A DNA stretch of 64,000 bases from Octopus sinensis (GCF_006345805.1 NC_043015.1:19096001-19160000); one strand, 5' to 3'; counted from the first letter of the stretch, positions 5,290-61,750 are shown. Translations and numbers: made by a program. Notes: generated by a model from the sequence alone, not told the origin.

Positions 5290-5985
5290 GAAGATGAGTC
5301 AAAATTTTTCAAAAGACTGATTACACAGGATGAAACCTGGGTCCATCACGATGATCCAGAGACCAAAGCCCAGTCAATGCAGTGGAAGCACCGTGACTCA
5401 CCTCCTCCAAAGAAGGCAAGGGTGCAGCCCTCCGCTGGCAAGGTCATGCTCACAGTCTTCTAGGACTAGGACGGAGTAGTGATGACAGATTTCCTGGCAA
5501 AGGGTACCACAATTACAGGAGCCTATTATGCTTCACTTTTGAGGAAATTAAGAGAAGCTATCAAAATCAAGAGGCGGGGCAAGATCAGCAAAGGCATCCT
5601 CCTCCTGCAGGACAACGCTCCGGTCCACAACTCGCGTGTCGCCAGATCAGAAGCACAGGCGTGCGGATATGAACTCCTCCCCCATCCCCCCTACTCTCCT
5701 GACCTTGCACCCTCTGATTTTCACCTCTTTCCAGCCATGAAGTTGCTCTTGAAAGGAAAGCGTTTCCCAGATAATGCAGCCTTGATTTCTGAAGTCACAT
5801 CGTGGTTGGAGGACCAAGCTGGGGTCTTCTACAAAAACGGTCTCCAGAGCTGCATCAAACGATGGGAGAAATGCGTAACTCTGAGTGGTTCCTATGTAGA
5901 AAAAGACTAATAACTGTGCCAAGTTTCGTTGCTCTACTGCTATGGGAAGTGGGTCAGGGGCATTACTTATTGAACGACCCTCGTA
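5290..5985 (+). mobile_element. 5'-truncated mariner (DD34D) with right TIR
   Basis: ITQDETWVHH...QDNAPVH-x-YSPDLAPSDFHLF with 34 residues between the 2nd and 3rd D; TIR ttacttattgaacgaccctcg followed by TA. Confidence 0.92.
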
Positions 5986-18601: not shown

Positions 18602-21600
18602 ATGAGAAAATGAAGAAAATGAGAAATTGACGTATGGACATCAATTTATCCAAAGATATTCCAACCAATATGAAATTAAATTTTGATCCCTACAGCCGTT
18701 TCCATATCCAATTAGTTCAATTAAAGAAATTAAATTAAATTAATTTAATTTAAAATTTTCAAAGGTTAAATGTGCAAATGAGGAAAATAATATACAAAAT
18801 ACAAGAAATATGTTACTACGTTCTTCTAATTATCCCCATAAGATTAGGAATATGCATCAAAAACATAACCCATATACATTTAATAAAGTTTGAAAATTTG
18901 AAAATCATAGGAACAAGTCCTCTAGTACCAGCCTCAGCAAATTTATTTGAGACCTAAAAGACAAGAAAAAAAATTTTCTGTGGAGTGGAAAATTATAAGC
19001 AGGGCTACTGCTTGGTAATTCTTTCTGTTTTCTCTGTCTTGAAGAGTTGCACCAAATCCTTATTTTCTTGGTAGCGCCTCTTAAATACGAGAATTGAGAC
19101 TGGTTTTTCATGTATTCATGCTTGTAAAGTGTCTCTCAAAAACTACCATTAGAAGTTTTATTTTCATAAATAGATCAATTATATATTAAACCTAATTTAT
19201 GTACTCCCGCATGTTTATGGTATTCAAAAAACTGCCATTGGACATAATATTATTATCATTATTATTATAAATAATTAATTATATATCATAACTACTTGAA
19301 TTTTAAATCTGTTGATACTTTACGTTTTATTACATTACCATCTGTAAATATAAGTATTAAAGAGTGCTTAGAACATACAATATTGATATAAAGAGATTAA
19401 ATTGTAAAAATGTATATTAAGTTTCCTGAACAAGTGACAATATCATTGTGATTGCTATAAATTCAATTAAGCACGTTTGTCATGAATATGTAGATGCTAT
19501 TTTCTAATATAATTTATTAAACTAAGTTAGAAGTAAACGTATTGATTTATGGTGAATTATGGCTTTAGTAATTTTTATTATAATAATAATAATAAATTTT
19601 TATCAATTGTATTAGGTAACGTTTAAGTTCTCCTTTGTTTACATAGTTGTAATGACAATAACATTTGCACACAAATATCGACGCGATGTTGTAATTAGTA
19701 GATTTTGATAAGTCATATTTTTTGTTGGTTTCCATCTTTTAACAAACACACGCGCTATTACGTGATAAATGTTACCGCTTTCTCTCTCTCTCTCTCTCTC
19801 TCTCCCTCTCTCAACTTATATATTATGGTTGTATTACTAAATACCGTGTCCCTACAAGTTATTAATATTTACATACCAGCTTCCATGAATGTGTTTAATA
19901 TGTAAATTGATATATCCAATAACGTTTCACCGCTATATGTAGTGGCTATTTAAGCAATGAGTTTGTGCATGATTAATGGGTTGGATGGGTGCTAATGAAG
20001 GAGAAAAACTCCTGAAATGTGTCCTGTATACGCTCATTACCCATTTTTCATCTTCGATTTCATTGTTGTTATTTACACCAGGCGTCTCAGAATCGAAACG
20101 TCCTAACAAAATCAGTACCGGCTATAATTTTTAATAGAAAATCTGTTGAGATAACCTTAACAAGTAATGATAATGTTGATATGAGTAACTGTATGTAGTC
20201 GGTACTCTGTTTAGGGTGTACGTTTATAATTTTCCGTATTCTAGGTAAATATGTATAATTTGTATATATAATTGTATATGAAATTTGTCGGGTACCAGAG
20301 CTTTTGAATCTTAGATTTTCTTATAACTTTTAACTGACTCAAATGGTAGAAAAGGGGTCAAAATCAAAGTCTTGGATATACTACAGATATACTGTATAAA
20401 TATTTAGTAATGCCAGTTTTGTATTTTCACTTTCCAGGGTATTTGTCCTCTTCTTCGTATTGGATGTATTATTTTGTACATTTTATGAAAGTGTCCCTTT
20501 GAGTTTATAGTCAGTTTAATTCTATCGGAGTATAAAATCAGATATGTGTTATGGTGGTAAAAATGTTTCCTAATTCATTACGTCTTAAAAGTTGGTTATA
20601 GCGAGAAAATATTTTAGACCCATAATGAGGTTCATTACACCGTTAATAGTTTTTATTGCATTTTAAATTTCTATGTTGTTTGCAAGGTATGCTCTTGGGT
20701 GATGCTTTAAAGTTTCTTTAAATTTGTCCTGTGCAGAAATTTATAAATGCTATATTTGCATGGGTTTCTTGGAAAACAGGATCTAGGGACATTTGAGTTT
20801 GGGTCATGTAGATTCGACTCATATTCACTTTTGTATGGCGTTCGTAAAAGGAACAAATATTTTTCTGCGATGAACTTACAGCGTTCAGCAGATTTTCATC
20901 GTCACACGTTATCAAGCCTAATGATGCCTTAAAGAATATTTAAGACTGGAGGAAAGTAGCATAGACAAGAGACATACTTTCAGAAACTTCGGGAGCCTCC
21001 AACTTTCAAACATGTGCTGTAGTCATTTTACTTCCCTAACAATGGGGCTATTACTCTTTAAGTATGAATATCGCGATGTTATACGCAGCCTTAGAAAACC
21101 GAATCATTGTATGACACCGAATCATTGTATGGAATGAAAAACAATCTTGCAATGTTTTGTTCATATTACACTAAAATTATCTGTGAAACTAAACACACAG
21201 CAAAATCAAATTATTTTATTTTATTTATTTATTTTGCTCTTTTCCGCAGATCTCCCTTGAAAATGTGGAAAATCACAAATATTTCCCTCGTGACTTTACT
21301 TTTGCTACACACTGTGTAAGTATATCTCTTCAAAGATACCACCAAGTTTTTCTCCTTATATCCTCTATATAAATTGCAGAAACTATTTTTTCTATCTTGT
21401 TTGAAAAACAACTTAAAAATATAAACTACATAAAATCTTTTAAAATTCTGCATTCCAAAAGTATAATACGCACTTTTCATATTAAAATATTTTGTTTATA
21501 AGCGTGCACACTGTCTGATAGCGTATTTAGTATTTCGCATTGGGTTTTGTATAAGGTGATTCATCTGTGTATATTATTGAATATAAACTCTTTGATCCAT

Positions 21601-22199
21601 TGACACACGGCGCGAATCGTTTCATGATGCTCCATTTGATGGAAAGATTCGCGCATAAGTTAATGGTTCAAAAATCAGCAGACTTTATTTAGCCTCAAGG
21701 TCTCATATCCTATTTAGATCTACGAATTCTATTGACCAACTGAATTCTAGATCTGAAACTTTCATTAAATGTATATTATTGAACAGAAAATACCACCCTC
21801 TCTAGACTAAACTTGCAGTTGCACAAACTTTCTCCTATCCCGATGAAATTAAATACTCCAACCATCCTAACGGGATAAAGGGATGCAAGTTCCTTTACTT
21901 TCATATTTCTTTTTTCTTTCTTCTCATTCCCATTTTCTTTTTATCTTTTTCCTCTCTTCCTTTCTCGTCCTTTCTCACTTTATTTTAAAAAGCAGCTATG
22001 TTGCTTAGAAATACAAGGTACGCTATACAAGCTTATCCGACCATTGCATTTTTAGAGGCATGAAACAAACAGTAGCTCCAATTTAAATCCTATATATAGC
22101 AAATGGTATGTACCTTTCACTGGATGAAGTACTTTTTTGTTTATGCCATCAATAATGGAGCAGAACGTTACACAAACACACACACACACACATGTATGT

Positions 22200-22910
22200 A
22201 TTTATGTATGTATGTCATTATTCAGTTTTATTTCAAGATTTCTTGCCAACAGAGAAAGAGCTGGTTTCTAACCTAGATCTAAGGTTCCTTCATTGAAATG
22301 TCAACAACATCAACAGGGTATTTTTGCATGTACGTATGTAAACGTGCAGATTCGTATGTTTTGTTTTATGTATGTATTCTCATGCATATACTTGCATATC
22401 TAGACATGTTCATATATACTTAAATGATAAACTTCTGGATAAAATTCTGTTTTACAGATTTTTACAGTTCCAGTGATGGATTGGATCTGTAGTCTTCTAA
22501 TCAGCTTTCTCCTTTATGGTTTAGAGAACCCTAATTTCTCTAGATTGGTATTTAGGCAGTGTGTTACATATATTAGGGCGCCAATAATTACAGGTATCAA
22601 CCTGAACTGGATAGAGTAACTGCAGATCAGTAAAATTCACTGATCATTTTTTTCACTAACATCTGCTGGGCAGCTAGTTTCTACAACTGTACACAGTTTC
22701 TCTTCTCTATCCCTAATCATTATATCAGATATGTTGTGCTTACACTTTATTGAGGTCTTCACTGGGACATTCCACCGGTACTCCTTTTTATTATGAGTGG
22801 CTATGGCTTCTTCTTTACTGTGGGTTCTTATTTTTTTTCGTCCTCTTGGTTATCTTTTCGACGGATTTCATTATAGAGTGTCCTAGCCACAACATCATGT
22901 CTCATTGATA
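22200..22910 (-). mobile_element. R4/Dong-like (REL endonuclease) LINE 3' portion
   Basis: YLSMRHDVVARTLYNEIRRK motif; nucleotide similarity to 56141-56835; the 3' end abuts (CATA)n. Sequence beyond 22910 becomes AT-garbled. Confidence 0.8.
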
Positions 22911-24382
22911 GATATAATTTATGAATTTTTATATTTTATATTTGATATTTTTATACATTTATACATCCTTTTATATACTACCATAGTGTTAATAATTTAT
23001 TAAAAATTTTTTGATAATTTTAAAGTTGTTTTTATATAATTCACTGGATATGTGAATTCCTATTTTATTATAACTTTTAATCATGCAGTGTATTCATTAA
23101 GTGTTTATATGCCCAATTTGTTTAAATATTGTATCTGAACGTACTCTCTTATACATTTGGTACATCTCTAATTTAATTACTCCATATATTGGATACCATT
23201 CCTTACGATAATTCGTAACGAAGCGAAAAGTTTTTATATTGGTTTAATGTATACTATAAGTTTCTATTCATTTGATAATTTAATTCCGTTATACATTCAT
23301 TATAGAATATTTTTATCATGATCTTCTATACACAATGTTTAACAAAAGGTTTAATATATTTTTCTTATGTATTAAAGTATCCCATTATTAGGTTTTACAT
23401 TTAATTTCTAACCTTTTTTATATATTCATTTAAATTTTTTCGTTTTAACATTACAAATTTGCTAAGTTATAATATACTGCCTCAGTTATTCTCTAATTCT
23501 AAATTCCACCCCTAAATTTTATATTACTTATTCCCTTAGATTTTTCATTATATTCAAGATAAATATTGGCCTTTCCTATCCTTCTTTCTTTCAATTATCA
23601 TCCCTTCCCCATCAGGCATTCCCTTATTACTACCCCACGCCCAACCCTTTTGTGTAGTTGGATTTATGATTCTGGTACATTGAGTTTAAAAGATTGACAT
23701 TAATTGATTTATCACCATTAACTAGAATGCAGTTGACAACTGCCAATGTATTTGATTCTAAATGGTTGAAGACTACATTCTACATATTGTCATCCAGATG
23801 TAAATATCTAGGTCACCCTTCTTTTTTATCTTCATCCCCACTCTCTTACTCCTTAAATTATTGTAGACTCGACAAGGTATGCATTATTTTCTAAACTCAT
23901 TCTGCCAGAAATATGACAACAGAAACAATATAAATATTTTGAGCTTCATTATTGATGTGAATATGTTAAAGCAGTGGTTGTACTCTTTATGTTTGAAGTC
24001 TATGCGGTCATCTGACGAGAACGGTTTCTTTCAAATGATGTAATGAGCCGCTTGAAATGGCCGTAATGAATTGACATCTGTACATCTTCATTACTCATTT
24101 ATATTTTATCCATCGATCTTGGAAGATTCACTTTGGAAATACTATAGAAAGTACCTTTATATAAAGTACATGCGTGAACTACCAAGAGCGGATATATTCA
24201 CTCAGCTGGGTTGCGTTGTCTGCACACACTGCAGGAATATCAGTTGCAAACATTACTGCACAGAATGTTGATATTCAAAATTCAATTAATATTGTTTGGG
24301 TGTGCAGATTATGCCGACCTAACATCATGGTGCCTCAATTTAAGTAACTAATTCAATGGAATCTCAATTATATATATATATG

Positions 24383-24473
<91 letters not shown>

Positions 24474-24531
24474 AAGATTATTTTTACAGATATTCTATAG
24501 AACTTATAACCAGCACTGATTTTTGCTACAG

Positions 24532-24583
24532 TGTTTCGTATTGAGACGTCAGATGTAAACAGACAATATGATCGAAGACAAAA
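24532..24583 (+). CDS. Weak candidate upstream exon of the neuropeptide precursor (xFRIETSDVNRQYDRRQK)
   Basis: Acceptor tgatttttgctacag and donor GTGAGT; the phase-2 exit matches the 26981 exon. It lies between (TA)n tracts in sequence with hammerhead-like relics on the minus strand, so it may be repeat-derived. Confidence 0.25.
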
Positions 24584-24778
24584 GTGAGTAATGACTGCTT
24601 ATGCCATATTTCGGGATTTGTTTTCCATTCTTCAGCACTCATCTAACCTCCGAACACATTGATTATATAGCCACCGCATACAGCGGTGTTAAGTTATTGG
24701 ATATGTCAATTTACATATATAGACGCATTCCTGGGGCTAGTATGTACCTAGAAATCTTTTACATATATATAAATATTT

Positions 24779-24864
<86 letters not shown>

Positions 24865-26980
24865 CCCTCTCTTACAACGACCAGTGACTTGATTTAATTT
24901 TCTCTTTAGATCCTACACTCTCTGATTAAATTTATCTAATTGGTATAACAAATGGTGTGCAGTTATTCTTGAAATAAAAACCTTCTAATAATCATATTCT
25001 TTCAAACCGATGAATGCCCATGAAATCCTGCATTCTGGCCTTAATCATAAGTATTCATACAGCTATTAGATAAATATATGTACACGACACAAATATGATT
25101 ACAGTTTTTGTATCCCTTCATCGATACTAGATTCTGGTTTGGCCAGAGAATTAATTGTCCCTCGTAGAATTTACCACGATGTTCTGCGAGATACGGGAAG
25201 TTTATTTCCTGTAAAGATGACAGAAGTGTATAATTTAGGCGCTGATTTCAAAATCTCATACATCCTAGCAAAAGTATGGTGAATGTACTTTATAAATCAA
25301 TCACCATCCTTTGAAATAATATTTATAAAAGACGTTTTTTTATTGATCCCTTATCTTTTCGACTTTTACTTGTTTACCTTGCTATTTTATATTTGATTTA
25401 TTTAATACCCGACAGGGATCGGTAAATTAATTATCGGAATGTACTGATTTGATTATGAATCAATATATTTTTTTATCTATGTATGTGTAACTATGTATAA
25501 TCTGGTACGTTTTAATATTCTTAATTAAGTGCATCGATTTTTTCACATGTCTCTCTCTTGAAGTACAATTCTATATAAACAATGAAAGGCCGAGGAGGCC
25601 TAAGCAATAGGATACTGTACTTGGTGCAACCTCAGTATGTAGTATTTGGGATACTGCTTTCACACACAACATTTCTAAGTGGTAGATAATTCTTAAATAA
25701 TCTTATCTTTCTACTTCATTTCTGTCCTCACTAATCACAAGTATTATTCTCCCGTATATTATCATTCTCTACTGGACACTTTTATTTTACATCACATAGC
25801 AATGATTTCTTGCCCTTTAAAATTCAGAATGATTACATTTATTACAACTTCCATTAGCAAAACCTTCGATTGCATCTGAAATAAAATTTAGAAAATAACT
25901 AGCAAAGCAGTTTGCCCAAGTGCCCATCAACAATTTTTAAAAATCTTTTTTACAGCAAGTGCTGACAAAACCTTTTCCCGGACTCCATTATGAACATTCG
26001 GATTACCTCAGTTCCCAGTTATCTTTTTACATATTCCCTGAATTATGTTACCTTATAATCAGAAAATGACCACGACACCGGCATGTAGTTCTACAATATT
26101 AACTATTGGTGCTAAATAGGTCGCCACTCGAGCGACTTTGATGAAAAGTGAGAAATTATTCTTTATCAGAAGTACTGAAGATATCAAACTTCCCAAAAAC
26201 CACCCTACTACAATGCATTCTTGTAAATCATGGCAACATACAATCTAAACCTACAACATACATATTTTAATATTCTTTTATAGAGACCATAATTTATTTG
26301 AATAGTAACCCTGAGTCAATGCAAGAAAATACTTCAGATCTGAGTTAAAGCTGATTTTATATAAAGTTCAAAAATCCCTTGCACAAAATGTCTGAACCCT
26401 ATCTAAGAAAGACAACTGTCATTTAAACAATACTTTACTCCTCAAAACTCTATAATTTCGGCCCTTTATATGTACTATTATCATTGCAACAAGTCCAGAT
26501 CTTTTGAGATTCTTGACAGAAATCTTGAAGCTTTCACTTATTTTCTAATGTCACAAACTTACTGTTGTATTTCATTCATTAAACAAGTACTTCATTTCAG
26601 ACTTTCATCACTCCTAAATTCTCTGACCTTATTTTCTTTCCAACCAAAATTTTAAATGCAAAAATAGCATCAAATTCATAAATATATTACAGTAGTTTCT
26701 AAATCTGAATCTAGTAAAAGACGTCTTCACCTAACTTGTAAGAAATTAAAACACGATAACTACAATAAATAATGTTATTTGACTTATTTGTATAAAACTA
26801 ACCCAGGTTTAAATTTTTACTTTCAAGTATTAAATCCATATACTATACATTGTTTTGACGGCAATATATAATTTCGGTTAACTAACAATATTCTCTAAGA
26901 TATTCATTTATGAAATAATAATAATAATTACTGTTAATGCAGACATATCTTTGTGACATTGAATATGTTTTATTTTTCAG

Positions 26981-28223
26981 ATTCACAGAAAACAGTCCGG
27001 ACAAAAAGCAGCTGGATCAGTTATCCGGTAAGCTGAATAGAGAGTTATCACTGGATCATTTAGCAAATCAATTAAGCGAGAATATTGAACCCCTGTCAAA
27101 TCGTTTAATTGGAAAGCGTTTTCTGGATCCACTGGCCAGTGGTCTTATTGGTAAAAGATATCTTGATCCATTGGCCAGTGGACTTCTTGGAAAAAGAAAT
27201 TCAGATGTTAACACTAGTAAAAATCATGCAGGAAACAGACAAAAAGATGGAATCTTGAGTCAAACAGGGAAACAACATTTTGACCTCTTAGATAGAGAAC
27301 TTATTGGTAAACGCTATCTTGACCCATTAGCTAGTGGTCTTATTGGCAAACGCTATCTAGACCCTTTGGCTAGTGGTCTCATTGGTAAAAGATATCTTGA
27401 TCCATTGGCTAGTGGACTTCTTGGTAAAAGAGACACACGCCTTGATTCGAAAAGTGATGACAATCAAGGGACAGATGACTACACGTCTAATGATCTTGCT
27501 ATTAATGATGCTGGAAAACGTTATCTTGATCCATTGGCTAGCAGTATCATTGGTAAACGACATCTTGATCCATTGGCCAGTGGACTAATTGGTAAACGAT
27601 ATCTTGATCCATTGGCTAGTGGTCTCATCGGTAAACGATATCTTGATCCATTGGCTAGCGGTCTTATTGGTAAACGGTATCTTGATCCATTGGCTAGTGG
27701 TCTTATTGGTAAACGATATCTTGATCCATTGGCTAGTGGTCTTATTGGTAAACGATATCTTGATCCATTGGCTAGCGGTCTTATTGGTAAACGGTATCTT
27801 GATCCATTAGCTAGTGGTCTTATCGGTAAACGATATCTAGATCCATTGGCGAGTGGTCTCATCGGTAAACGATATCTTGATCCATTGGCTAGTGGTCTTA
27901 TTGGTAAACGATATCTTGATCCATTGGCAAGTGGTCTTATTGGTAAACGATACCTAGATCCATTGGCCAGTGGACTAATTGGTAAACGATATCTTGATCC
28001 GTTGGCTAGTGGTCTTATTGGAAAACGGTATCTTGATCCATTAGCCAGTGATCTTATTGGTAAAAGAGATGTGAACCCCAACTCTAGTAAAGAGAATTCT
28101 GCAAATAGCCGAAGTAATGTGATCTTGGATCCAACGACCAATGGCTCCGCTATGAATAAACGGTATCTTGACCCACTAGCAAGTGGAATCATTGGAAAAA
28201 GACAAAATGAAAAGTCAGAATAA
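26981..28223 (+). CDS. LASGLVamide: Terminal coding exon of a multi-copy amidated neuropeptide precursor (LASGLVamide/LASGLXamide family; main product YLDPLASGLI-amide)
   Basis: Open frame with 20 xLDPLAS..-G-KR cassettes (13 YLDPLASGLI, 2 YLDPLASGLL, and one each of FLDPLASGLI, HLDPLASGLI, YLDPLASSII, YLDPLASDLI, YLDPLASGII). Each has a Gly amide donor plus a KR convertase site, and polar/acidic spacers separate the blocks. Polypyrimidine acceptor ttttatttttcag ends at 26980 (phase 2); TAA ends at 28223. The symbol is a family name recalled from molluscan neuropeptide literature, not a database hit. Confidence 0.9.
27522..28067 (+). repeat. 14 x 39-bp coding tandem array within the neuropeptide exon
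   Basis: Units start every 39 nt from 27522 to 28029; variation is mostly at synonymous third positions. Confidence 0.95.
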
Positions 28224-28650
28224 TCTGATGAAAACATTTATCTACTTAATGGTTTTGAGGATATTCATGAAATGAGAAGTGTATATGCTTAAAAATGGAT
28301 CGATTGATTTGACAGTGATGTTTGATAATATTTGTTTTCTCTCTATTTCAAATGGGACAATTTTCATTGACATCAAAAAACTAAAAGTATAGATAAAAGC
28401 AAAACAAAAACGAATAAAACAATCTATAAAACTTTATAAAAAAAATAAAAATAAAAATATCATCTCCGAAACAAATATATCCAACATTAATAGAGGATGA
28501 TGTTTGAAAAAGAAAAGCTGAAAATCGGTTATTTTCTTTAATGGTTCTTTGTGAAGTAGCAACTGTGATTTTATCGTTCTCTTTTACACAAAACAGGCTA
28601 CCTAAAACATACTGTAAACAATTATTTGTGAATAAAACCTTTTCTTTTCT
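28224..28650 (+). other. Probable 3' UTR of the neuropeptide gene with candidate poly(A) signals
   Basis: AT-rich sequence after the stop, with AATAAA near 28414, 28444 and 28631; the true 3' end is unknown. Confidence 0.45.
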
Positions 28651-29454: not shown

Positions 29455-29934
29455 GTTTGGCAAAACCGTGTAATTCAGAGGCTGACGTTAAGAGATCGCT
29501 TCGATTCTGCAGCAGGAATTTCTCGCCATGTAAATCGTGATTATGGAATGAATGTGTCTCGAAAGACTGTGGCTCGTCATTTGAAGAAAGTCGGACTTCA
29601 TGCCCATTTCTCTGCCACTAAACATCACATCAGTATAAAGCGCCAAATAGCGACAACTGGATGTACGACAACTGGTCGCATGTGTTCCTCAGTTACGAAA
29701 GCAATTTCAATTTCGTTGGCTCTGATGGTAGAAAATACTTGAGACGTCGTAAAAGTGAAAGATTGCTCCCTAAATGCGTGGAAAAATCAGTGAAGTTTGG
29801 ATGTAGGGGCTTAATGGTGTGGGGAATGATTTCTGCAGCAGGTGTTGGGCCTTTGATCAAGATCTATGGCAATGTGAATACAGCCATATACAAAAACATC
29901 GTTCTGCAGCATGTTGTGCCAGCTATGAAGCAAA
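29455..29934 (+). mobile_element. Tc1 transposase fragment
   Basis: VSRKTVARHLKKVGL, WSHVFLSYESNFN..GSDG and SVKFGCRGLMVWGMIS motifs. Confidence 0.8.
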
Positions 29935-31150
29935 GACAAGTACAGGTAGCCAGAGTCAACGTTGAATTCTGCAACTCTTTTAACTCTAACAAGTATGTTT
30001 GCAAATATATAAACAGGTTTAAACGCTGCAACACTCTTATGCAGAATGGTAGTCAGCAGATAAATAAAAATGACGAAGATGCACAGTATGACAGAGGAAG
30101 ATATATCAGTATCTACGAGGCTTTTTGGCGCATCTTCAATTTTCCCATTCAAGAGAGGCACCCAGCCATCATTCATCTGAGTGTCCATCTAGAGAATGGC
30201 CACAGGGTTATCTTTACAAAACAAGCAGCCTTGCAACAAACACTCTCCAAAAGAAACTACCCTTACTGCCTTTTTTAAGTTGTGTCAAGTAGATGAAGAT
30301 GCAAGAAAACTCCTTTAGTCACAATTACCTAAGTATTACACCTGGAGAAACAATAAGAGGCACAAGAGGAAACATGGGGCTGAAACACGTGCAAGAGTTT
30401 ACAGTGTTCACCCAAGTCAAGCAGAATGCTACTACTTACAGCTCCTTTTGCCTGAAGTACATGGTCCCAAATCATTCCAAAATTCAAGGAGGGTAAATGG
30501 TCACGTGTGTGAAACTTATAGGGAAGCATGTTATCAACAAGGTTTTTTTTAGAAAATAATGAGCATTGAAACCTTGCATTGACTGAAGCCTCTTTATTAG
30601 ATTCTCCGAGAAAACTCGGTAGCCTTTTTTCAATTATACTGAACATGTGTCAACTTGGCAGTCTCCTACAGTTTTGGATGAAACATCATGAGGACATAGC
30701 TGAGGACCTAAAGTATGCGGTTCAACAGGCAAACTCAAAATATCAATATTCAGTTCTCTGAAACAATTTTTAAGGATTTGAGGATCACGTTTTGGCCATG
30801 GAAGGCAAAAATTTGCAAGAGAGTCTGGCTCTGGACTGCCAAAAACAAACCATCAAATTAGTGATTCAACTTCAAGAGACATAGCAAGAGAGACAAATTA
30901 TGACAGCACAGACTTGGCTGCATTTGTGAACCTAAACTTCTTCCAGAACATCGCCGTGTATATGATAAAATGCTTCGTTTATTACTATTATTAATTTTTT
31001 TTCTTTTATATTATGAATTCAGAATTGATTTCCCAATTGAATATTAAATTGAATTTAGGATAACAAATTTCTATACAACATATTTTGCTTTTTTCTTCCA
31101 ATATATAAGGAATAATTTAATTCCCGGGCAACGCCGGGTTCCTTTGCTAG
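29935..31150 (+). mobile_element. Helitron Rep/helicase fragment with canonical 3' end
   Basis: VNVEFCNS..KYVCKYIN, GRYISIYEAFWRIFNFPIQERHPAIIHLSVHLENG; 3' hairpin CCCGGGCAACGCCGGG (31123-31138) then CTAG|T at 31147-31151. Confidence 0.85.
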
Positions 31151-40067: not shown

Positions 40068-41260
40068 AGCTTCTACAGGACTAGAACTGTTTCATTCAAG
40101 AGAAATCTTCAGGAAGCTAGTTAACAAGAATTGTATGGCATTTATACATTTAGGCAGGTTTAAAGGGGGTTGTGGGGGACTTTTTTGGGGGTAGGCATAG
40201 CGCAAATATCATACTTGGGGAAGTGGTCAAGGGTCAGTGTTAAATTAGATAGAAGAATAAATAAAAAAATAAAAAAATAATAAAAAAATAATAAAAATAA
40301 GTAAAGAATAAAAAAAAAAAATATATATATTATATTATATATAAAAAGGGGATAGAGTTTTAGGTAAATAAGGAGATTCTCACTTATACCTATGCAATAT
40401 GTATACATATATACACACACATACAAACATATATACATATACATACACACATACATACACACACACATATATACATATATACACTTACACATACATATAC
40501 ATATCTACGCATACACATATATGTATACATACACACACTCACATGCATACACGTATACACACATGTATATATCACACACGACCACACATACATATACACA
40601 CAGAAAAATATATATACATACACACACATACTCACATACACGCATACACACACATATCCACACACACACATGCACACACAGCACACTAGTCCCTATATAC
40701 ACATATATACACATAACACATATATACACACACATACTATACATACATATATATATATATAATATATATATATACATATGTGTACTATGCATACCTACAC
40801 ATACACACATATATATACACATACAAATACAGACCCATTCCCTAATTTTAATTTTATTATCTTCATTTATACTTTTGTTATTTTGACCGCTGGTCACAAA
40901 CATCTTGGCTATGACAGCCAGTCCATTTATCTGTCTACTGGAAAACAAGCACTCATTCACTCAACACACTTTTAGCACGTACACTCACTCATTCGTACAC
41001 TCATACACATACACGCACGCACGCGTTATATTCATACATACATACATCTACATACATTCACGTATATACACGTACGTACGCGTACCTACAGATTCATGTC
41101 TACACTCTTAGAAGGCTAGTCTATACATATACACCAATAAATATAAATACACACACATACATATACACCTACATACAAATACATACATGTATATATATAT
41201 ATATATATTCACACCAATAAATATAAATACACACACATACATATACACCTACATACAAAT

Positions 41261-41294
<34 letters not shown>

Positions 41295-41449
41295 TCACAT
41301 ATATATACACACACACATATATATATATATATACACATATACACATATATACACATATATACACACATACACATACATACATATACACAATACACATACA
41401 AATACATACACATACGCATATACATATACATACATACATATACACACAC

Positions 41450-41498
<49 letters not shown>

Positions 41499-41860
41499 CA
41501 AACACATACATATACATACATACATATACAAATATACGCACACACATACATACATACTCATATACACATACACGCACATACACATGTACATGCGTACCCA
41601 TACACACACACACACGCGCGCATCCATATATACACATAAGTACACACATGCGTAAAAGTATACATATATCTATGCTTACACATACACACACACACGCGCG
41701 CCTCCTTATATTCATACTTACATGCATACTCAAAAATAAGTAAATAGTAAAATATATATACGCGCAGTTATTCATACATGCATACTCAAAAAATAAAATA
41801 AATATTAAGTATATGTACGTGCAGTTACCTATATATAGACGGATACATACATATAAACTT

Positions 41861-41912
<52 letters not shown>

Positions 41913-42097
41913 GATACATTACATATATACACATATATATATATACATACTACACACATGTACAAAATACATCACACATAGATAACTCTACGTACCTACA
42001 TATACATAAACACACGAGCGTACACGTATATGTACATATACACATACACATACACACGCATATATATACATACATACATACACATACACACATATAT

Positions 42098-42151
<54 letters not shown>

Positions 42152-42554
42152 TATATATACATATACACACACATATACATGTGTGCAAACATACATACAT
42201 ACTCATACACGCACACACACTTACATATACATATATACACACACTTACACACATATATACATACACATATACATACATACATACATACATACATATATGC
42301 ATACATACACACACACATATAATATACATACATACACATACACATACCTATACATATATATACACACACATATGTGTATGTGTATGTATGTATATATATA
42401 TGTGTGTGTGTATGTATGCATATATGTATATGTATGTATGTATATGTGTATGTATATATGTGTGTAAGTGTGTGTATATATGTATATGTAAGTGTGTGTG
42501 CGTGTATGAGTATGTATGTATGTTTGCACACATGTATGTGTGTGTGTATATGTA

Positions 42555-42601
<47 letters not shown>

Positions 42602-43117
42602 TATATAATATATGTAATGTGTGTGTGTGTATATATGTGTGTATGTGTATGTTTGTATGTATATATATGCGTGTGAATGTGTATGTGTATATGTATATAT
42701 ATATATGTGTGTATGTGTGTGTGTATATATATATGTATATGTATATGTATGTATCCGTCTATATAATAGGTAACTGCACGTACATATACTTAATATTTAT
42801 TATTTATTTTTTGAGTATGCATGTATGAATAACTGCGCGTATATATATTTTACTATTTACTTATTTTTTGAGTATGCATGTAAGTATGAATATGAGGAGG
42901 CGCGTGTGTGTGTGTGTATGTGTAAGCATAGATATATGTATACTTTTACGCATGTGTGTACTTATGTGTATATATGGATGCGCGCGTGTGTGTGTGTGTA
43001 TGGGTACGCATGTACATGTGTATGTGCGTGTATGTGTATATGAGTATGTATGTATGTGTGTGCGTATATTTGTATTGTATGTATGTATATGTATGTGTGT
43101 GTATGTGTATATATATA

Positions 43118-43154
<37 letters not shown>

Positions 43155-43381
43155 TATAGTGTGTGTGTATATGTATGTATGTATATGTATATGCGTATGT
43201 GTATGTATTTGTATGTGTATGCATGCGCGTATATATATGTATGTATATGTATACGTGTGGGTGTGTGTATGTGTATAAATGTATGTATGTATGGATGTAT
43301 GGATGTATGTATGTATGTATACGTATGTATGTGTATGTGTGTATATGTATGTATGTGTATGTGTGTATATATGTGTATATA

Positions 43382-43412
<31 letters not shown>

Positions 43413-43969
43413 GTGTATATATATGTGAATATATATATATATATATACATGTATGTATTTGTATGTAGGTGTATATGTATGTGTGTGTATTTATATTTAT
43501 TGGTGTGAATATATATATATATATATACATGTATGTATTTGTATGTAGGTGTATATGTATGTGTGTGTATTTATATTTATTGGTGTATATGTATAGACTA
43601 GCCTTCTAAGAGTGTAGACATGAATCTGTAGGTACGCGTACGTATGTGTATATACGTGAATGTATGTAGATGGATGTATGTATGAATATAACGCGTGCGT
43701 GCGTGTATGTGTATGAGTGTACGAATGAGTGAGTGTACGTGCTAAAGAGTGTGCGTGAGTGAATGAGTGCTTGTTTTCCAGTAGACAGATAAATGGACTG
43801 GCTGTCATAGCCAAGATGTTGTGACCAGCGGTCAAAGATAACAAAAGTAATAAATGAAGATAATAAATTAAAATTAGGGAATGGGTCTGTATTTGTATGT
43901 GTATATATATGTGTGTATGTGTAGGTATGCATAGGTACACATATGTATATATATATATATATAATATAT

Positions 43970-44000
<31 letters not shown>

Positions 44001-44637
44001 ATGTATGTCTGTGTATATATGTGTGTATATGTATATATGTGTATATAGGGACTAGTGTGCTGTGTGTGCATGTGTGTGTGTGGATATGTGTGTGTATGCG
44101 TGTATGTGAGTATGTGTGGTCGTGTGTGTATATATACATGTGTGTATACGTGTATGCATGTGAGTGTGTGTATGTATACATATATGTGTATGCGTAGATA
44201 TGTATATGTATGTGTAAGTGTATATATATGTATATATGTGTGTGTGTATGTATGTGTGTATGTATATGTATATATGTTTGTATGTATGTGTATATATGTA
44301 TACATATGTGCATAGGTATAAGTGAGAATCTCCTTATTTACCTAAAACTCTATCCCCTTTTTTTTATATATATATATATATTTTTTTTTATTCTTTATTA
44401 TTTTATTTTTTATTTTTTATTTTTTTATTTTTTATTTATTCTTCTATCTAATTTAACACTGACTCCTTGACCACTTCCCCAAGTATGATATTTTGCGCTA
44501 TGCCTACCCCCAAAAAGTCCCCCACCAACACCCCTTTAAACCTGCCTAAATGTATAAATGCCAATACAATTCTTGTTAACTAGCTTCCTGAAGATTTCTC
44601 TTGAATGAAACAGTTCTAGTCCTGTAGAAGCTCCTTC
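40068..44637. repeat. ~4.6-kb inverted duplication (arms ~2.3 kb, ~25-bp spacer near 42346-42370)
   Basis: Unique blocks mirror each other (40068-40390 vs 44305-44637; 40840-41130 vs 43585-43890; 41680-41850 vs 42745-42905); differences are mostly 1-bp indels. Confidence 0.92.
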
Positions 44638-47055: not shown

Positions 47056-48519
47056 GCTAATATTCATTCCATTTCTAGCTAACTTAATATTTTTTCTATT
47101 AAGTCTAACAATTATGGTACCCATATTTGGAAGAGTAGAGTGATATTCTTACTGATTTATTAGAAATTATTTTATAATATTTATGGGAAGTAGGGAAGTT
47201 TTTTTTCTAGTATAGACATAAATTTGCCGTATATGTTCGTAGAAATCGCACAGTTGATTTAACCATACAACATTTTTTCTTTTGAATTTTTTTTATTTGA
47301 GTAAGGGTGGGAAAGATTATTGTTATCTATATCCTTTAGAGATTAGAGATTCGTTATTCACTATAGTCTTATATTTATGTTTATTAGGTTTTTTCCTTGT
47401 GGGAGAGATTTTATATTATTATTTATATTTATTTTATCTGGCTTAACTTTTTTATACTTATTTGTGATCTGTTTACTATTTTCATTTATTGTATTGTTAT
47501 ATTGTTATATAAGTTAGAGTTGTTAGTTATTAATCTTTTCTAGGTTACGTGTTTCAATTGATTTATATTTTTTTTAAATAGAAGATTTTATATTATTTGA
47601 GCTATTTTCATTCGTTTTATCGTTTGAAAAATTTGTATTATCAAGATCCAGGAAGGTGATTTCTTGGTCGTATCCAGCTCCAGATAATGCAACATTATAA
47701 TGATGTGAATGAGAATTTAAAATTTCATTGTTAAATGATAATTTTGAAATTCTCCTTGAAATACTTTTCACTATTGATTTCAGTATATCTAGTAACTTCA
47801 CCTTCTTTTCTATATGGGTAATATAAATTCGAATTTAAGTCGAAGGTAACATCTAGAAAGTTAACTATCTTGGTGAAATCCTTGAAAAATCTACTAATTT
47901 TCTTCCTTATTCTCTCAATTATCGATTTATTATTACTAGGGACGATAAATAAAACATCATCCCTGTATAGACCACCTTGTAGTTCGAGGATCTCCCTACT
48001 TATGTATTTTAATAAATAAGTTCCTACTAAATTAGTTATCTCCGTCGAATCACTAGAGCCCATGGGTATATCGAAATTATTTGGGGTATCAGTTCTAGTC
48101 CACAATTTTCCCTCAAATTCAATGATAGTTTTTCTAGCTAATAAAATAATATCAATTTCTTCCCTAGTTATGAGAGAAAGTTTTTTTGCGAAAATGAGTG
48201 ATTTGTTTAAGAGAATAGGGGATAAGCTAGAATAGTAATTATTAATATCAAATTGGATGAAAGAATATCTATTATTATTATTTAAAGATTTAAACCAATT
48301 AATTACCTCCTCTGTGTCAATCCATAGTTTCAAGGGAAGGTTAGGGATTATATGGGGTAGAACATTGTCCAAAATAGATTTACTAAGTCGGCCAATATCT
48401 GACTTAGTTGAGCATATGAGTCTTACAGAAGGGTTTTCACAGAAATTTTTCTTATGGTCCTTAAGGTTAATTTTAGGTTCACACGGTGTTAAAGGTATAT
48501 ATATATATATATATATATC

Positions 48520-48929
48520 AGGAGTGGCTGTGTGGTAAATAGCTTGCTTACCAACCACATGGATCCGGGTTCAGTCCCACTGCGTGGCACCTTGGGCAAG
48601 TGTCTTCTACTATAGCCTCGGGCCGATCAAAGCCTTGTGAGTGGATATGGTAGACGGAAACTGAAAGAAGCCCGTCGTATATATGTATATGTATATATGC
48701 GTGTGTGTGTTTGTGTGTCTGTGTCTGTCCCCCTAGCATTGCTTGACAACCGATGCTGGTGTGTTTATGTCCCCGTTACTTAGCGGTTCGGCAAAAGAGA
48801 CCGATAGAATAAGTACTGGGCTTACAAAAGAATAAGTCCCGGGGTCGAGTTGCTCGATTAAAGGCGGTGCTCCAGCATGGCCGCAGTCAAATGACTGAAA
48901 CAAGTAAAAGAGTAAAAGAGTAAAAGAGT
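48520..48929 (+). mobile_element. Full-length SINE family B inserted in (TA)n
   Basis: ggagtggctgtgtggtaa head through a (GTAAAAGA)3 tail. Confidence 0.92.
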
Positions 48930-59970: not shown

Positions 59971-60769
59971 ATTCTGCAGAACTGCAGAAATTGTATTCAC
60001 CTCAACAGACGTCATTGATTGGTTGAAATTGCCGAAATGCAAGAAATCTAACAAGACATAGCTTACAAGCTTCAAAATTTTCTCAAGAAAGCCAAGAGAA
60101 AAAGATGTTTTATGTAACACATCCTACCAGTATACGAAGTTTAAAAGTGTTTAGTTACAAAGAAATTATTTTAAAACTCTGTTGGTCAAAGTGAAAAGAT
60201 CCTATACACACTTATATATGCGCACGCACATGTGCATATATAAGGAAATACATGCATACATGTATGTGCGTGCATGTATATGTATGTGTATGTATGTATG
60301 TATACATGAATATATATGTGTGTGTATATATTCATGTGTATGTGTATGTGTGTAAATGTACACCTATACACAATACATACTCTCATATAAATACAGGCTC
60401 ACATACTCAGATACATAAGCCCATACACACACACGTATATACGTATATACTTCCACTCCTTACTACTTTCCCTAACCATGCAACCGATTTCCTGTTCATC
60501 ATGCGGTACTTTCCAAGTAACTGTTGTCACTGAATTTCCAACATCAATGTGTGACACCGCATGACCTTTCTCGAAAAATCGCATTCCACCATCCAGTAAT
60601 AAACATTGACCTTCTTAATTCAAATGCCCAACAGCTGAGGGTTAGCAACACGCTTGAAACTCAGAGTACGAAGGAGTCTGATCCAAACTGTTTTTATCTA
60701 TCTATCCATCTAGCTATCTATCTATCTATCTATCTATACACACACACACATACACACAAACACACATGC

Positions 60770-61750
60770 CACGTACAAAAGAAGCAGTCCAAATTTCAAA
60801 GAGGCCATATTGTGGGTCAGTCTGAATGTGGACTTAATCAGCGTAAAATTGCAGAAAACCTTGGGATCCTGCTTTCTACAGTTAATAGAGTGATGGTACA
60901 ATTCACCAGAGAGAAGGGGGACTTCACATCACCTTGCCCAGGTTGACCAGGGCCCTCCCACATGACCCTTCGCTTCGTTAAAAGAAGTGTGGGGGATAAT
61001 CCTTGTTGCAAGGCCTCTGACATAACAGAACAAGTTGATGTCAGTCCCAGAACAGCTGTCAGGTATCTTCACAGACTTGGCTACTATGGCAGAGCTGCAA
61101 GAAGGCAGCAACATCTTCGACCTGCCAATATCAAGTGGAGAATAGATTGGGCCAGTTGGATGGTGGAGAGACCACTAGCATTTTGGGACACTGCCATATT
61201 GTCTGATGGGTCTGCTTTATTTTCTGACAGTGGTCGAGTGTGGGCCTGGAAACTCTGTGGTCAAGAATTTGATGTGAAAAGATTGCAACCAACAATGAAA
61301 CATGGCAGCTATTCTGTGATGGTCTGGGGAGAAATTTGGAGCAATGGTTGATCAAAGCTAGTGGAGTGTGAGGGAAAGATAAACTCAAATAAATATGCGT
61401 TCATATTGCAGAAAGGATTCCTTCCAATCTTCTCCAATAGTGAAATTATTAAAGAAGACTCTTTATTTATGGCAGATGGGGCTCCTTGTCACATGGTTAG
61501 AAAGACCCAACATTGGCTGGACAAGAATGGCATCAAAAAGCTTCCAGGTCCAACCCAATCACCAGATATGAGCCCTAGTGAACTCCTCTGGGGAATAATG
61601 AACAGGACACTTTGTAAAAAGAACAAGATCTTTTGAGATTACCGTGTGAAACTTGGCAAGAAATTCCTCAAGAAAATACTCCTCATCTGATCAGTAGCAT
61701 GCCTGATAGGGTCCTTGCAATGAAAAATGCGAAGCGTATGTCTGCTAATT
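60770..61750 (+). mobile_element. Tc1 transposase pseudogene (DD34E)
   Basis: HTH ([17 protein letters not shown]), ILSDGS, KHGSYSVMVWG and ADGAPCH-x-SPDMSPSE with 34-residue spacing; several stops. Confidence 0.9.

What the first reader, a model, noticed from the sequence alone, without database searches (positions are those of the whole stretch)
26981..28223. Neuropeptide precursor with 20 copies of xLDPLASGL[I/L]-amide, the only clear host gene in 64 kb
Seen: 20 cassettes, each ending G-KR, 13 of them identical YLDPLASGLI. Established: G-KR means convertase cleavage plus PAM amidation, and LASGLV/LASGLX-amide precursors are reported from molluscs. As far as I recall, their receptor and function are poorly defined. 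Inference: this is a cephalopod member dominated by one peptide species, so it may mark a high-output peptidergic signalling system that could be deorphanised.
Basis: partly seen in the sequence, partly recalled or inferred. Interest (0 to 1): 0.75.

Follow-up and report, generated by a model that had tools for sequence, protein, structure and literature searches.

The report
Octopus LASGLI-amide ("buccalin-like") neuropeptide gene
This is the main coding exon of a real octopus neuropeptide gene that encodes 20 copies of a ten-residue amidated peptide, but the gene, its transcript and its family are already published (under the name "buccalin"), so only its receptor and function remain open.

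Summary
Window 26981-28223 (+) is one open exon with 20 in-frame xLDPLASxxx-GKR cassettes, 13 of them YLDPLASGLI. I found the missing signal-peptide exon at 21263-21315. Joined across a 5,665-nt GT-AG intron, the two exons match the published Octopus vulgaris cDNA PV206714 at 372 of 372 nt, so a spliced transcript with a signal peptide exists. The 431-aa product is 97% identical to O. bimaculoides XP_014768501.1. Li et al. 2021 already print that protein as a member of the molluscan LASGLI/V-amide family, formerly called "buccalin-like". BLAST hits listed in a 2026 paper name the octopus proteins "buccalin" or "buccalin-like". Published read counts show brain expression, highest in the optic lobe. 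"Buccalin" in situ maps of octopus brain and arm probably show this gene. The peptides lack the Buc/AstA motif Y/F-X-F-G-L/I-amide, so "buccalin" is a misnomer and LASGLI/V-amide is the right family. The new points are minor. The genome shows 20 cassettes where the published O. vulgaris transcript is collapsed to 7. The phase-2 intron inside the signal peptide is shared with bivalve and gastropod homologues. Receptor and function are still unknown. Verdict: real, correctly read, already known.

The parts
21250..21315 (+). Exon carrying the start codon. The coding part is 21263-21315 and gives MWKITNISLVTLLLLHT plus 2 nt, the hydrophobic core of the signal peptide. It is preceded by an acceptor-like ttttccgcag ending at 21249, so a non-coding 5' exon may lie further upstream.
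   Evidence: This was the only non-microsatellite candidate in a phase-aware scan for ATG, a hydrophobic core and a GT donor upstream of the exon. The sequence was read. It is identical to the 5' end of the published O. vulgaris CDS.
21316..26980 (+). Intron of 5,665 nt, GT...AG, phase 2. The split codon is GT|A, which reads Val18.
   Evidence: The donor is TGT|GTAAGTAT and the acceptor is TGTTTTATTTTTCAG|ATTCAC. The published cDNA joins 21315 directly to 26981. The Dreissena and Lymnaea homologues also have a phase-2 intron inside the signal peptide, after residue 16 and residue 24.
26981..28223 (+). Last coding exon: 413 codons plus the TAA stop at 28221-28223. It encodes the rest of the 431-aa prepropeptide, with 24 KR sites, 23 of them preceded by Gly.
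27081..27119 (+). Degenerate first cassette (NIEPLSNRLI-GKR). It forms the C-terminus of the N-terminal propeptide and would give a long peptide ending in -LI-amide.
   Evidence: It aligns with NLDSLSDELVGGR in the bivalve-like homologue P0003.
27120..27197 (+). Cassettes 1-2: FLDPLASGLI-GKR and YLDPLASGLL-GKR.
27276..27314 (+). Degenerate cassette (HFDLLDRELI-GKR) at the end of the first spacer.
27315..27431 (+). Cassettes 3-5: two YLDPLASGLI and one YLDPLASGLL.
27432..27521 (+). Acidic spacer DTRLDSKSDDNQGTDDYTSNDLAINDA-GKR.
   Evidence: It is conserved in O. bimaculoides and missing from the collapsed published O. vulgaris transcript.
27522..28067 (+). Cassettes 6-19, uninterrupted: YLDPLASSII, HLDPLASGLI, eleven YLDPLASGLI, then YLDPLASDLI. 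Several units are identical at nucleotide level, which points to recent duplication or gene conversion.
28068..28163 (+). Spacer DVNPNSSKENSANSRSNVILDPTTNGSAMN-KR. It has no Gly before KR, so it would not be amidated.
28164..28202 (+). Cassette 20, YLDPLASGII-GKR, followed by the C-terminal tail QNEKSE.
28224..28455 (+). Probable 3' UTR, with AATAAA signals at 28413, 28444 and 28450.
   Evidence: This rests on motif positions only. The transcript end was not verified.

Best explanation
This is the Octopus (O. vulgaris or a very close relative) gene for the LASGLI/V-amide neuropeptide precursor, the gene that databases call 'buccalin' or 'buccalin-like'.

Two coding exons (21263-21315 and 26981-28223) are spliced across a 5.7-kb phase-2 intron into a 431-aa prepropeptide. 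An N-terminal signal peptide of about 20 residues sends it into the secretory pathway. Prohormone convertases cut after each of the 24 Lys-Arg pairs, and carboxypeptidase E removes the basic residues. Peptidylglycine alpha-amidating monooxygenase then converts the exposed C-terminal Gly into an amide.

One precursor molecule therefore yields 20 decapeptide amides: 13 YLDPLASGLI-NH2, plus 3 isobaric variants (two YLDPLASGLL-NH2 and one YLDPLASGII-NH2) and 4 single variants. It also yields two long -LI-amide peptides and some spacer peptides. The peptides are made in central neurons (optic lobe above supra-oesophageal above sub-oesophageal mass), and at a lower level in the arm. They presumably act through a G-protein-coupled receptor that has not been identified.

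Shown here: gene structure, splice junction, reading frame, cassette count, purifying selection on the peptide, orthology and family, and transcription in nervous tissue. Inferred: the signal-peptide cleavage site, convertase and amidation processing, secretion, and the receptor class.
For: **Anatomy.** The open exon holds 20 GKR-terminated cassettes.

**Splicing.** The signal-peptide exon came from a phase-aware scan. Exon 1 joined to exon 2 is identical at 372 of 372 nt to the printed part of O. vulgaris CDS c26559_g1_i1+g2_i1 (GenBank PV206714). The 164-aa prefix and 108-aa suffix of that protein are also identical.

**Orthology.** The model is 97% identical (418 of 430 aligned residues) to O. 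bimaculoides XP_014768501.1, with the same order of cassettes and spacers.

**Family.**
[quoted passage not shown] 2021, Suppl. Fig. 2.
- The best database relatives are a Dreissena precursor with SFDTLASGLI-GKR units (E = 1e-22), a Lymnaea precursor and a bivalve-like precursor.
- Dreissena is one of the species in which De Oliveira et al. 2019 named LASGLIamide.

**Gene structure.** Dreissena and Lymnaea also have a phase-2 intron inside the signal peptide.

**Selection.** The 39-nt unit occurs in 17 nucleotide versions. Pairwise codon differences are 793 synonymous against 146 non-synonymous.

**Expression.** Published counts for the two transcript fragments are 12-20 CPM in arm tip, 58-77 in supra-oesophageal mass, 42-44 in sub-oesophageal mass and 130-214 in optic lobe. 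Convertase 1-like, convertase 2-like and carboxypeptidase E transcripts appear in the same samples.

**Host genome.** The nearest relatives of a retroelement ORF in the window are O. sinensis (75%) and O. bimaculoides (66%). The other listed hits are at most 43% identical.
Against: - I found no peptide-level evidence (mass spectrometry) for YLDPLASGLI-NH2 in any cephalopod. Sequence-string searches of the paper library returned no cephalopod peptidomics.
- In oyster the family's peptides were not detected by LC-MS/MS in adult neural tissue.
- No receptor is known.
- The signal-peptide cleavage site was judged by eye, because no predictor was available.
- Neither protein search returned the octopus orthologues. 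Orthology therefore rests on sequences printed in two papers' supplements, not on the databases.
- O. vulgaris and O. sinensis cannot be told apart with the data I had.
Confidence: 0.93

Rival explanations
1. It is the true octopus buccalin, the orthologue of arthropod allatostatin-A, as the database names imply. Its peptides would act on the octopus AstA/buccalin-type receptor.
For: - The BLAST hits quoted in PMC12919962 carry the names 'buccalin-like [Octopus sinensis]' and 'buccalin [Octopus bimaculoides]', and that paper files the transcript under 'Buccalin / AstA'.
- LASGLV/I precursors were first described as 'buccalin-like'.
- Li et al. found no other buccalin precursor in O. bimaculoides, Sepia pharaonis or Architeuthis dux, although a buccalin-type receptor is present in all three.
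- The family boundary is not clean. Biomphalaria XP_013071848.1 is listed both as a buccalin precursor and as a LASGLI/V member.
Against: - The defining C-terminal motif Y/F-X-F-G-L/I-amide (PMC12509031) occurs 0 times in the 431-aa protein. The molluscan [FY]xGG[LI]-Gly-dibasic form also occurs 0 times.
- There is no aromatic residue in the last five positions.
- Aligned from the C-terminus, YLDPLASGLI shares 2 of 10 residues with Nautilus buccalin GVDSSFFSGGL, against 6-7 of 10 with bivalve LASGLV/I peptides. This is my reading of the sequences.
- Bivalves and gastropods carry both a buccalin gene and a LASGLV/I gene, so the two are distinct loci.
- Li et al. explicitly excluded this family from the buccalins.
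Confidence: 0.1
2. It is a member of the pedal-peptide/orcokinin (PP/OK) group, close to FCAP-like or 'MLD' pedal peptide 2, rather than a family of its own. It would share that group's receptors.
For: - The exhaustive phmmer search returns Platynereis 'pedal peptide neuropeptide precursor 2 MLDpeptide' (P0015, E = 1.7e-20), with MLDEVGSSLL units.
- It also returns similar unnamed precursors with MLDPIGSSLL units, a 496-aa Ruditapes protein with GFDRLSSGFV units, and giant gastropod proteins with YLDGIASSLI or YLDHLGSSLV units.
- Scallop FCAP-like peptides MLDRLGSGLV and MDRLGSGLI look alike.
- All share the pattern x-[LF]-D-x-x-[AG]-S-[GS]-[LF]-[ILV].
Against: - Those units are followed directly by KK or KR with no Gly, so they are not amidated. 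All 20 cassettes here have Gly-Lys-Arg.
- E-values between tandem-repeat proteins are inflated, because each repeat adds score.
- Identity to LASGLI/V members is higher than to the annelid MLD precursor: 62% for Dreissena against 46%.
- Published surveys list LASGLV-amide, FCAP and pedal peptides as separate genes in the same species.
Confidence: 0.07
3. It is a non-functional repeat expansion, a pseudogene or repeat-derived ORF that happens to stay open.
For: The window is full of microsatellites and transposon remnants that also give long ORFs. The antisense strand of the array is open too (238 aa, 27521-28237).
Against: - A spliced transcript is present in four O. vulgaris tissues.
- The protein is 97% conserved with O. 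bimaculoides.
- There is a strong excess of synonymous over non-synonymous differences among units.
- The processing sites never vary.
- Homologues exist in bivalves and gastropods with the same intron phase.
Confidence: 0.01

Closest known systems
Octopus bimaculoides XP_014768501.1 (named 'buccalin' in BLAST output; printed as a LASGLI/V-amide family precursor in Li et al. 2021, PMC8514136, Suppl. Fig. 2)
   Same: It is 97% identical over 430 aligned residues. It has the same signal peptide, the same three spacers in the same order, and the same dominant peptide YLDPLASGLI-amide, including the odd copies YLDPLASSII, HLDPLASGLI, YLDPLASDLI and YLDPLASGII.
   Different: As printed it has 22 cassettes against 20 here. 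Two of its copies end in SKR instead of GKR, so they would not be amidated. It has two extra N-terminal residues (MK-), where the window has TTG instead of ATG. Some single-residue differences may be errors from reading the PDF.
[quoted passage not shown]
   Same: The printed 372 nt are identical to exon 1 joined to exon 2 of the window. The protein prefix (164 aa) and suffix (108 aa) are identical.
   Different: The published protein has 232 aa and only 7 canonical cassettes. It lacks 199 aa (13 cassettes and the acidic spacer), because it was stitched together from two short-read fragments. The genome shows the full array.
Bivalve and gastropod LASGLV/I-amide precursors (Lottia, Crassostrea, Mytilus, Mizuhopecten, Dreissena, Aplysia)
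   Same: They are multi-copy precursors of peptides about 10 residues long, with the core D-x-[LI]-A-[SN]-G-L-[IV] followed by Gly-Lys-Arg. Dreissena matches with E = 1e-22. Dreissena and Lymnaea share the phase-2 intron in the signal peptide.
   Different: The octopus form has more copies (20, against roughly 7-14 in the bivalve precursors printed), a Tyr-Leu N-terminus and a Pro at position 4. It ends in Ile rather than the Val common in bivalves. The Lymnaea and other gastropod relatives returned by the search lack the amidating Gly.
Buccalin / allatostatin-A family
   Same: These are also multi-copy precursors of short amidated peptides with an Asp near the N-terminus and a C-terminal aliphatic amide. 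Historically the LASGLV/I family was called 'buccalin-like'.
   Different: The Buc/AstA motif Y/F-X-F-G-L/I-amide is absent. The two are separate genes in species that have both.
Pedal peptide 2 'MLD peptide' (Platynereis) and FCAP-like peptides (scallop)
   Same: They share the unit pattern x-L-D-x-[LIV]-G-S-[SG]-L-[LIV], in tandem copies between dibasic sites.
   Different: They are not amidated, and they are annotated as a different family. The relationship, if real, is deep.

Membership tests
LASGLI/V-amide neuropeptide precursors (Mollusca) | Secreted precursor: an N-terminal signal peptide ahead of the peptide array | tested here: met
   Exon 21263-21315 encodes MWKITNISLVTLLLLHT(V). It is spliced to the array in the published cDNA. 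The hydrophobic core was judged by Kyte-Doolittle score, without a dedicated predictor.
LASGLI/V-amide neuropeptide precursors (Mollusca) | Several tandem peptides with the C-terminal core L-A-S-G-L-[I/V] | tested here: met
   LASGL[IVL]-GKR occurs 17 times and LASxx[IVL]-GKR 20 times.
LASGLI/V-amide neuropeptide precursors (Mollusca) | Each peptide is followed by Gly plus a dibasic site (amidation signal) | tested here: met
   All 20 cassettes end in G-K-R, and these three residues never vary. Amidation itself was not shown.
LASGLI/V-amide neuropeptide precursors (Mollusca) | Significant sequence similarity to accepted members | tested here: met
   The Dreissena precursor matches with E = 1e-22. 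The model is 97% identical to O. bimaculoides XP_014768501.1, which is printed as a family member.
LASGLI/V-amide neuropeptide precursors (Mollusca) | Shared gene structure with homologues (not a published criterion; my own added test) | tested here: met
   A phase-2 intron sits within the signal peptide in the window (after residue 17), in Dreissena (after 16) and in Lymnaea (after 24).
LASGLI/V-amide neuropeptide precursors (Mollusca) | Mature amidated peptides present in tissue | not testable with these tools
   This needs mass spectrometry. A 2025 paper reports such peptides as confirmed in scallop. They were not detected in adult oyster.
Buccalin / allatostatin-A | C-terminal Y/F-X-F-G-L/I-amide, in molluscs often [FY]-x-G-G-[LI]-amide (PMC12509031) | tested here: not met
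   Both patterns have 0 matches in the 431-aa protein.
Buccalin / allatostatin-A | Peptides activate a Buc/AstA-type (galanin/kisspeptin-related) receptor | not testable with these tools
   An AstA-type receptor exists in O. vulgaris (PV164468) and O. bimaculoides (XP_014776263.1). I found no assay of these peptides on it.
Pedal peptide / orcokinin type (including MLD pedal peptide 2 and FCAP-like) | Non-amidated peptides, with units followed directly by a dibasic site and often an acidic or aromatic C-terminus | tested here: not met
   All 20 units here carry the amidating Gly. The related MLD, FCAP-like and gastropod units do not.
Pedal peptide / orcokinin type (including MLD pedal peptide 2 and FCAP-like) | Sequence similarity of the repeat unit | tested here: inconclusive
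   Platynereis pedal peptide 2 is hit with E = 1.7e-20 and 46% identity. Scores between tandem-repeat proteins are inflated.

The most novel reading that the evidence does not exclude
Coleoid cephalopods may have lost the classical buccalin precursor but kept the buccalin/AstA-type receptor. Li et al. 2021 report the precursor as 'not identified' in Octopus, Sepia and Architeuthis, with the receptor present in all three, while Nautilus has both. The 20-copy LASGLI-amide precursor could then be the ligand that serves that receptor in coleoids. In that case the 'buccalin' label would be functionally right for the wrong reason. The LASGLI/V-amide family, orphan since 2010, would be deorphanised in a way that ties it to the galanin/kisspeptin/AstA receptor clade.
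Probability: 0.15. Interest if true: 0.5.

Novelty: already known. Interest (0 to 1): 0.15.

Why it matters
As a discovery it matters little. The gene is annotated, its transcript is deposited, its family is published, and expression maps probably exist.

What it offers is tidying.
- The octopus "buccalin" used as a marker in recent brain and arm atlases is very probably a LASGLI/V-amide gene, not an allatostatin-A orthologue. That bears on functional inferences drawn from Aplysia buccalin.
- The genome gives the true peptide stoichiometry. There are 20 copies, and 16 of them are isobaric at 1059.596 Da. The only O. vulgaris transcript in print is collapsed.
- The family is still an orphan. 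With one dominant peptide and a brain-enriched transcript, octopus is a convenient species for a receptor screen.

Tried and rejected
- **Protein searches.** The word-index search with the exon translation gave only three hits, none cephalopod. The exhaustive search of 1.84 billion representatives gave 184 hits, again none cephalopod. Exact look-ups of the 431-aa model, the 232-aa published protein and the 428-aa raw ORF all failed. I first read this as "gene unannotated in cephalopods". I rejected that reading once two papers' supplements showed the octopus proteins exist. The collections simply do not return them.
- **Pfam.** Scanning the precursor gave no family.
- **Alternative start.** The in-frame ATG at 26937 (MQTYLCDIEYVLFFR...) is not the start. 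It lies in the polypyrimidine tract, is not hydrophobic, and is absent from the cDNA.
- **Signal-peptide exon scan.** Run over the whole window, the scan gives hundreds of false positives inside TG/CA microsatellites. Only within the 27 kb upstream, in the right phase, was it selective.
- **In situ probes.** I looked for the probe sequence behind the O. vulgaris "buccalin" in situ data, but the supplement is not held. The link between those maps and this gene stays an inference.
- **Unused search.** I considered spending the last protein search on Nautilus buccalin, to test whether coleoids lack a true buccalin. I left it unused, because a negative result from a collection that already misses known octopus proteins would not be informative.

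Full report
**1. The observation**

Window 26981-28223 on the + strand begins directly after a textbook splice acceptor (tgttttatttttcag|ATTCAC) and stays open for 413 codons to a TAA at 28221-28223.

The translation holds exactly 20 cassettes of the form xLDPLASxxx-Gly-Lys-Arg:
- 13 YLDPLASGLI
- 2 YLDPLASGLL
- 1 each of FLDPLASGLI, HLDPLASGLI, YLDPLASSII, YLDPLASDLI and YLDPLASGII

Two longer segments also end in -LI-GKR and are degenerate copies: ...NIEPLSNRLIGKR at 27081-27119 and ...HFDLLDRELIGKR at 27276-27314.

Tandem Repeats Finder gives a 39-nt period with 19.3 copies and a score of 881. At 33% GC, an open frame of this length has a probability of about 4e-14 per start.

The 20 units come in 17 different nucleotide versions. 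Pairwise codon differences are 793 synonymous against 146 non-synonymous, and Gly-Lys-Arg never changes. The peptide sequence is being conserved, not the DNA repeat. The 238-aa ORF on the opposite strand (27521-28237) is a by-product of the periodicity.

**2. The rest of the gene**

The exon starts in phase 2 and has no signal peptide, so I looked upstream for an ATG followed by a hydrophobic core and a GT donor in the matching phase. Outside microsatellites there was one candidate: ATG at 21263, MWKITNISLVTLLLLHT, and the donor TGT|GTAAGT after 21315.

The homologous genes of Dreissena polymorpha and Lymnaea stagnalis have the same layout. A short first coding exon ends in phase 2 inside the signal peptide, after residue 16 and residue 24 respectively. 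One large exon follows.

Joined, the two window exons give a 431-aa protein with 24 KR sites, 23 of them preceded by Gly. AATAAA signals lie about 190-230 nt downstream of the stop. An acceptor-like ttttccgcag ends at 21249, which suggests a further non-coding 5' exon. I could not test this.

**3. It is already in the literature**

*The O. vulgaris transcript.* A 2026 paper on O. vulgaris nociception (PMC12919962) prints in its Table S2 a transcript, c26559_g1_i1+c26559_g2_i1 (GenBank PV206714), labelled "Buccalin-like".
- Its 372 printed nucleotides are identical to my exon 1 plus exon 2 model, across the splice junction.
- Its protein matches the model over the first 164 and the last 108 residues.
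- It lacks the 199 residues in between (13 cassettes and one spacer). It was reconstructed from two short-read fragments and is collapsed.

*The O. bimaculoides protein.* Li et al. 2021 (PMC8514136) print O. bimaculoides XP_014768501.1 in Supplementary Figure 2. [quoted passage not shown] That protein is 97% identical to the window's, with the same spacers and the same odd copies, and has 22 cassettes.

*Host genome.* The closest relatives of a retroelement ORF elsewhere in the window are from O. sinensis (75%) and O. bimaculoides (66%). The other listed hits are at most 43% identical.

The window is therefore from Octopus, either O. vulgaris or something nearly identical to it.

**4. Expression**

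Table S3 of PMC12919962 gives, for the two fragments:

| Tissue | CPM |
|---|---|
| Arm tip | 12-20 |
| Supra-oesophageal mass | 58-77 |
| Sub-oesophageal mass | 42-44 |
| Optic lobe | 130-214 |

This is clearly neural but not extreme. In the three brain samples of the same table, FMRFamide-related transcripts reach 235-1,438 CPM and a tachykinin-related transcript 317-910 CPM. Convertase 1-like, convertase 2-like and carboxypeptidase E transcripts are present in the same tissues.

"Buccalin" mRNA has been mapped by in situ hybridisation to large neurons of the O. vulgaris vertical lobe and neighbouring lobes (PMC9303212). It has also been mapped by HCR to a small, non-glutamatergic neuron class in the intramuscular nerve cords of O. 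bocki (bioRxiv 10.64898/2026.06.06.730610). No other octopus buccalin is known, so those probes very probably target this gene. I could not see the probe sequences, so this is an inference.

**5. Which family**

The LASGLV-amide family has been reported as follows:
- First predicted in Lottia, then in oysters, with mature peptides reported as confirmed in scallop.
- Named LASGLIamide in Dreissena and aplacophorans.
- Its function is still called unknown in 2025.

The octopus peptides carry the core L-A-S-G-L-I and the amidation signal (17 exact LASGL[IVL]-GKR). They hit a Dreissena precursor at E = 1e-22.

They do not carry the Buc/AstA motif Y/F-X-F-G-L/I-amide that defines buccalins and was needed for full potency on the Aplysia receptor (PMC12509031). 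The motif has 0 matches. Membership of LASGLI/V-amide is met on every feature I could test. Membership of buccalin fails on its defining feature.

A weaker and deeper resemblance exists to non-amidated units of the pedal-peptide/orcokinin kind. Examples are Platynereis "pedal peptide 2 MLD peptide", scallop FCAP-like peptides, and giant gastropod proteins with YLDGIASSLI-KK units. I regard this as a lead only, because scores between tandem-repeat proteins are inflated.

**6. Mechanism**

*Shown:* the gene structure, the splice, the frame, the repeat count, purifying selection, orthology, and transcription in nervous tissue.

*Inferred from established prohormone biochemistry:*
- signal-peptide removal, probably after Thr20 by the -3/-1 rule
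- cleavage after Lys-Arg by PC1/3 and PC2
- trimming by carboxypeptidase E
- Gly-dependent amidation by PAM
- packaging into dense-core vesicles, and action on a GPCR

One precursor would release 20 decapeptide amides. Sixteen of them share one mass (1059.596 Da), because Leu and Ile are isobaric.

**7. What remains open**

The receptor and the function are unknown. Li et al. could not find a buccalin precursor in three coleoids, although all three keep a buccalin-type receptor, and Nautilus has both. It is therefore possible that LASGLI-amide serves that receptor in coleoids. I give this about 15%, because the peptides lack the motif that the Aplysia receptor prefers.

**8. A caution on the databases**

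Neither protein search returned any octopus orthologue, and the exact model is not in the collection. Other O. sinensis and O. bimaculoides proteins are there. Had I stopped at that point, I would have wrongly called the gene unannotated. The literature supplements corrected this.

**9. Verdict**

The finding is real and was read correctly by the first stage. It is also already known: annotated as "buccalin" or "buccalin-like", deposited as PV206714, and classified as LASGLI/V-amide in 2021. The residual value is a corrected copy number for O. vulgaris, a conserved intron phase, a naming correction for a marker now used in octopus neuroanatomy, and a clean orphan ligand for receptor screening.

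Noticed in passing
window 40397-44305: A microsatellite-rich block forms a near-palindrome centred near 42355. Its arms are 40971-41387 / 43330-43746 (94% complementary), 41526-41736 / 42865-43075 (99%) and 42114-42321 / 42391-42598 (92%, 69-nt spacer). It could be a real inverted duplication or an assembly artefact.
   Followed up: partly
window 47731-48558 (-) and 51706-52722 (-): These look like remnants of a Penelope-like retroelement; that label is my own reading. One is a 275-aa ORF with no Pfam hit, whose nearest relatives are O. sinensis (75%) and O. bimaculoides (66%). The other is a 338-aa ORF with a weak, sub-threshold GIY-YIG match (E = 0.0099).
   Followed up: partly
window 5479-5910 (+), 29661-30278 (+), 60524-60946 (+): Fragments of mariner/Tc1-type transposases. 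The first hits Pfam Transposase_1 and DDE_3. The third has a weak HTH_23 match. The second has no Pfam hit and is Tc1-like only by my reading.
   Followed up: partly
window 26981-28223 compared with GenBank PV206714: The published O. vulgaris 'buccalin-like' transcript is a collapsed assembly. It has 232 aa and 7 canonical cassettes, against 431 aa and 20 cassettes in the genome. It lacks 199 aa, including the acidic spacer DTRLDSK...INDAGKR.
   Followed up: yes
L002 (Lymnaea stagnalis) 18832-19500 and 24762-25145: The repeats of the Lymnaea homologue continue past the annotated end of the gene, which the source marks as partial. A second stretch of similar repeats lies about 5.5 kb downstream inside the next called gene. 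This suggests a tandem paralogue.
   Followed up: no
protein collections: The octopus orthologues named in two papers are returned by neither protein search, and the exact model is absent, although other Octopus proteins are present. The absence of cephalopod hits here says nothing about annotation.
   Followed up: partly
literature: PMC8514136 Table S1 and Suppl. Fig. 2: Biomphalaria XP_013071848.1 (PFDEIGSGLI-amide units) is listed both as the species' buccalin precursor and as a LASGLI/V-amide family member. The published boundary between the two families is not consistent.
   Followed up: no
relatives P0004, P0008, P0015, P0017: The unit pattern x-[LF]-D-x-x-[AG]-S-[GS]-[LF]-[ILV] recurs in several proteins. 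These are Platynereis pedal peptide 2 (MLD peptide), a 1,444-aa Aplysia protein (LOC101861866), a 755-aa Biomphalaria protein, and P0017, whose cluster includes a 496-aa Ruditapes protein. None of these has the amidating Gly. This may be a deep link between LASGLI/V-amide and pedal-peptide/orcokinin-type precursors.
   Followed up: partly
window 27639-27911: Several 39-nt units are identical at nucleotide level: 27639 matches 27756, and 27678, 27717 and 27873 match each other. Copy number also differs between species (20 here, 22 in O. bimaculoides). This indicates ongoing unequal crossing-over or gene conversion in the central array.
   Followed up: partly
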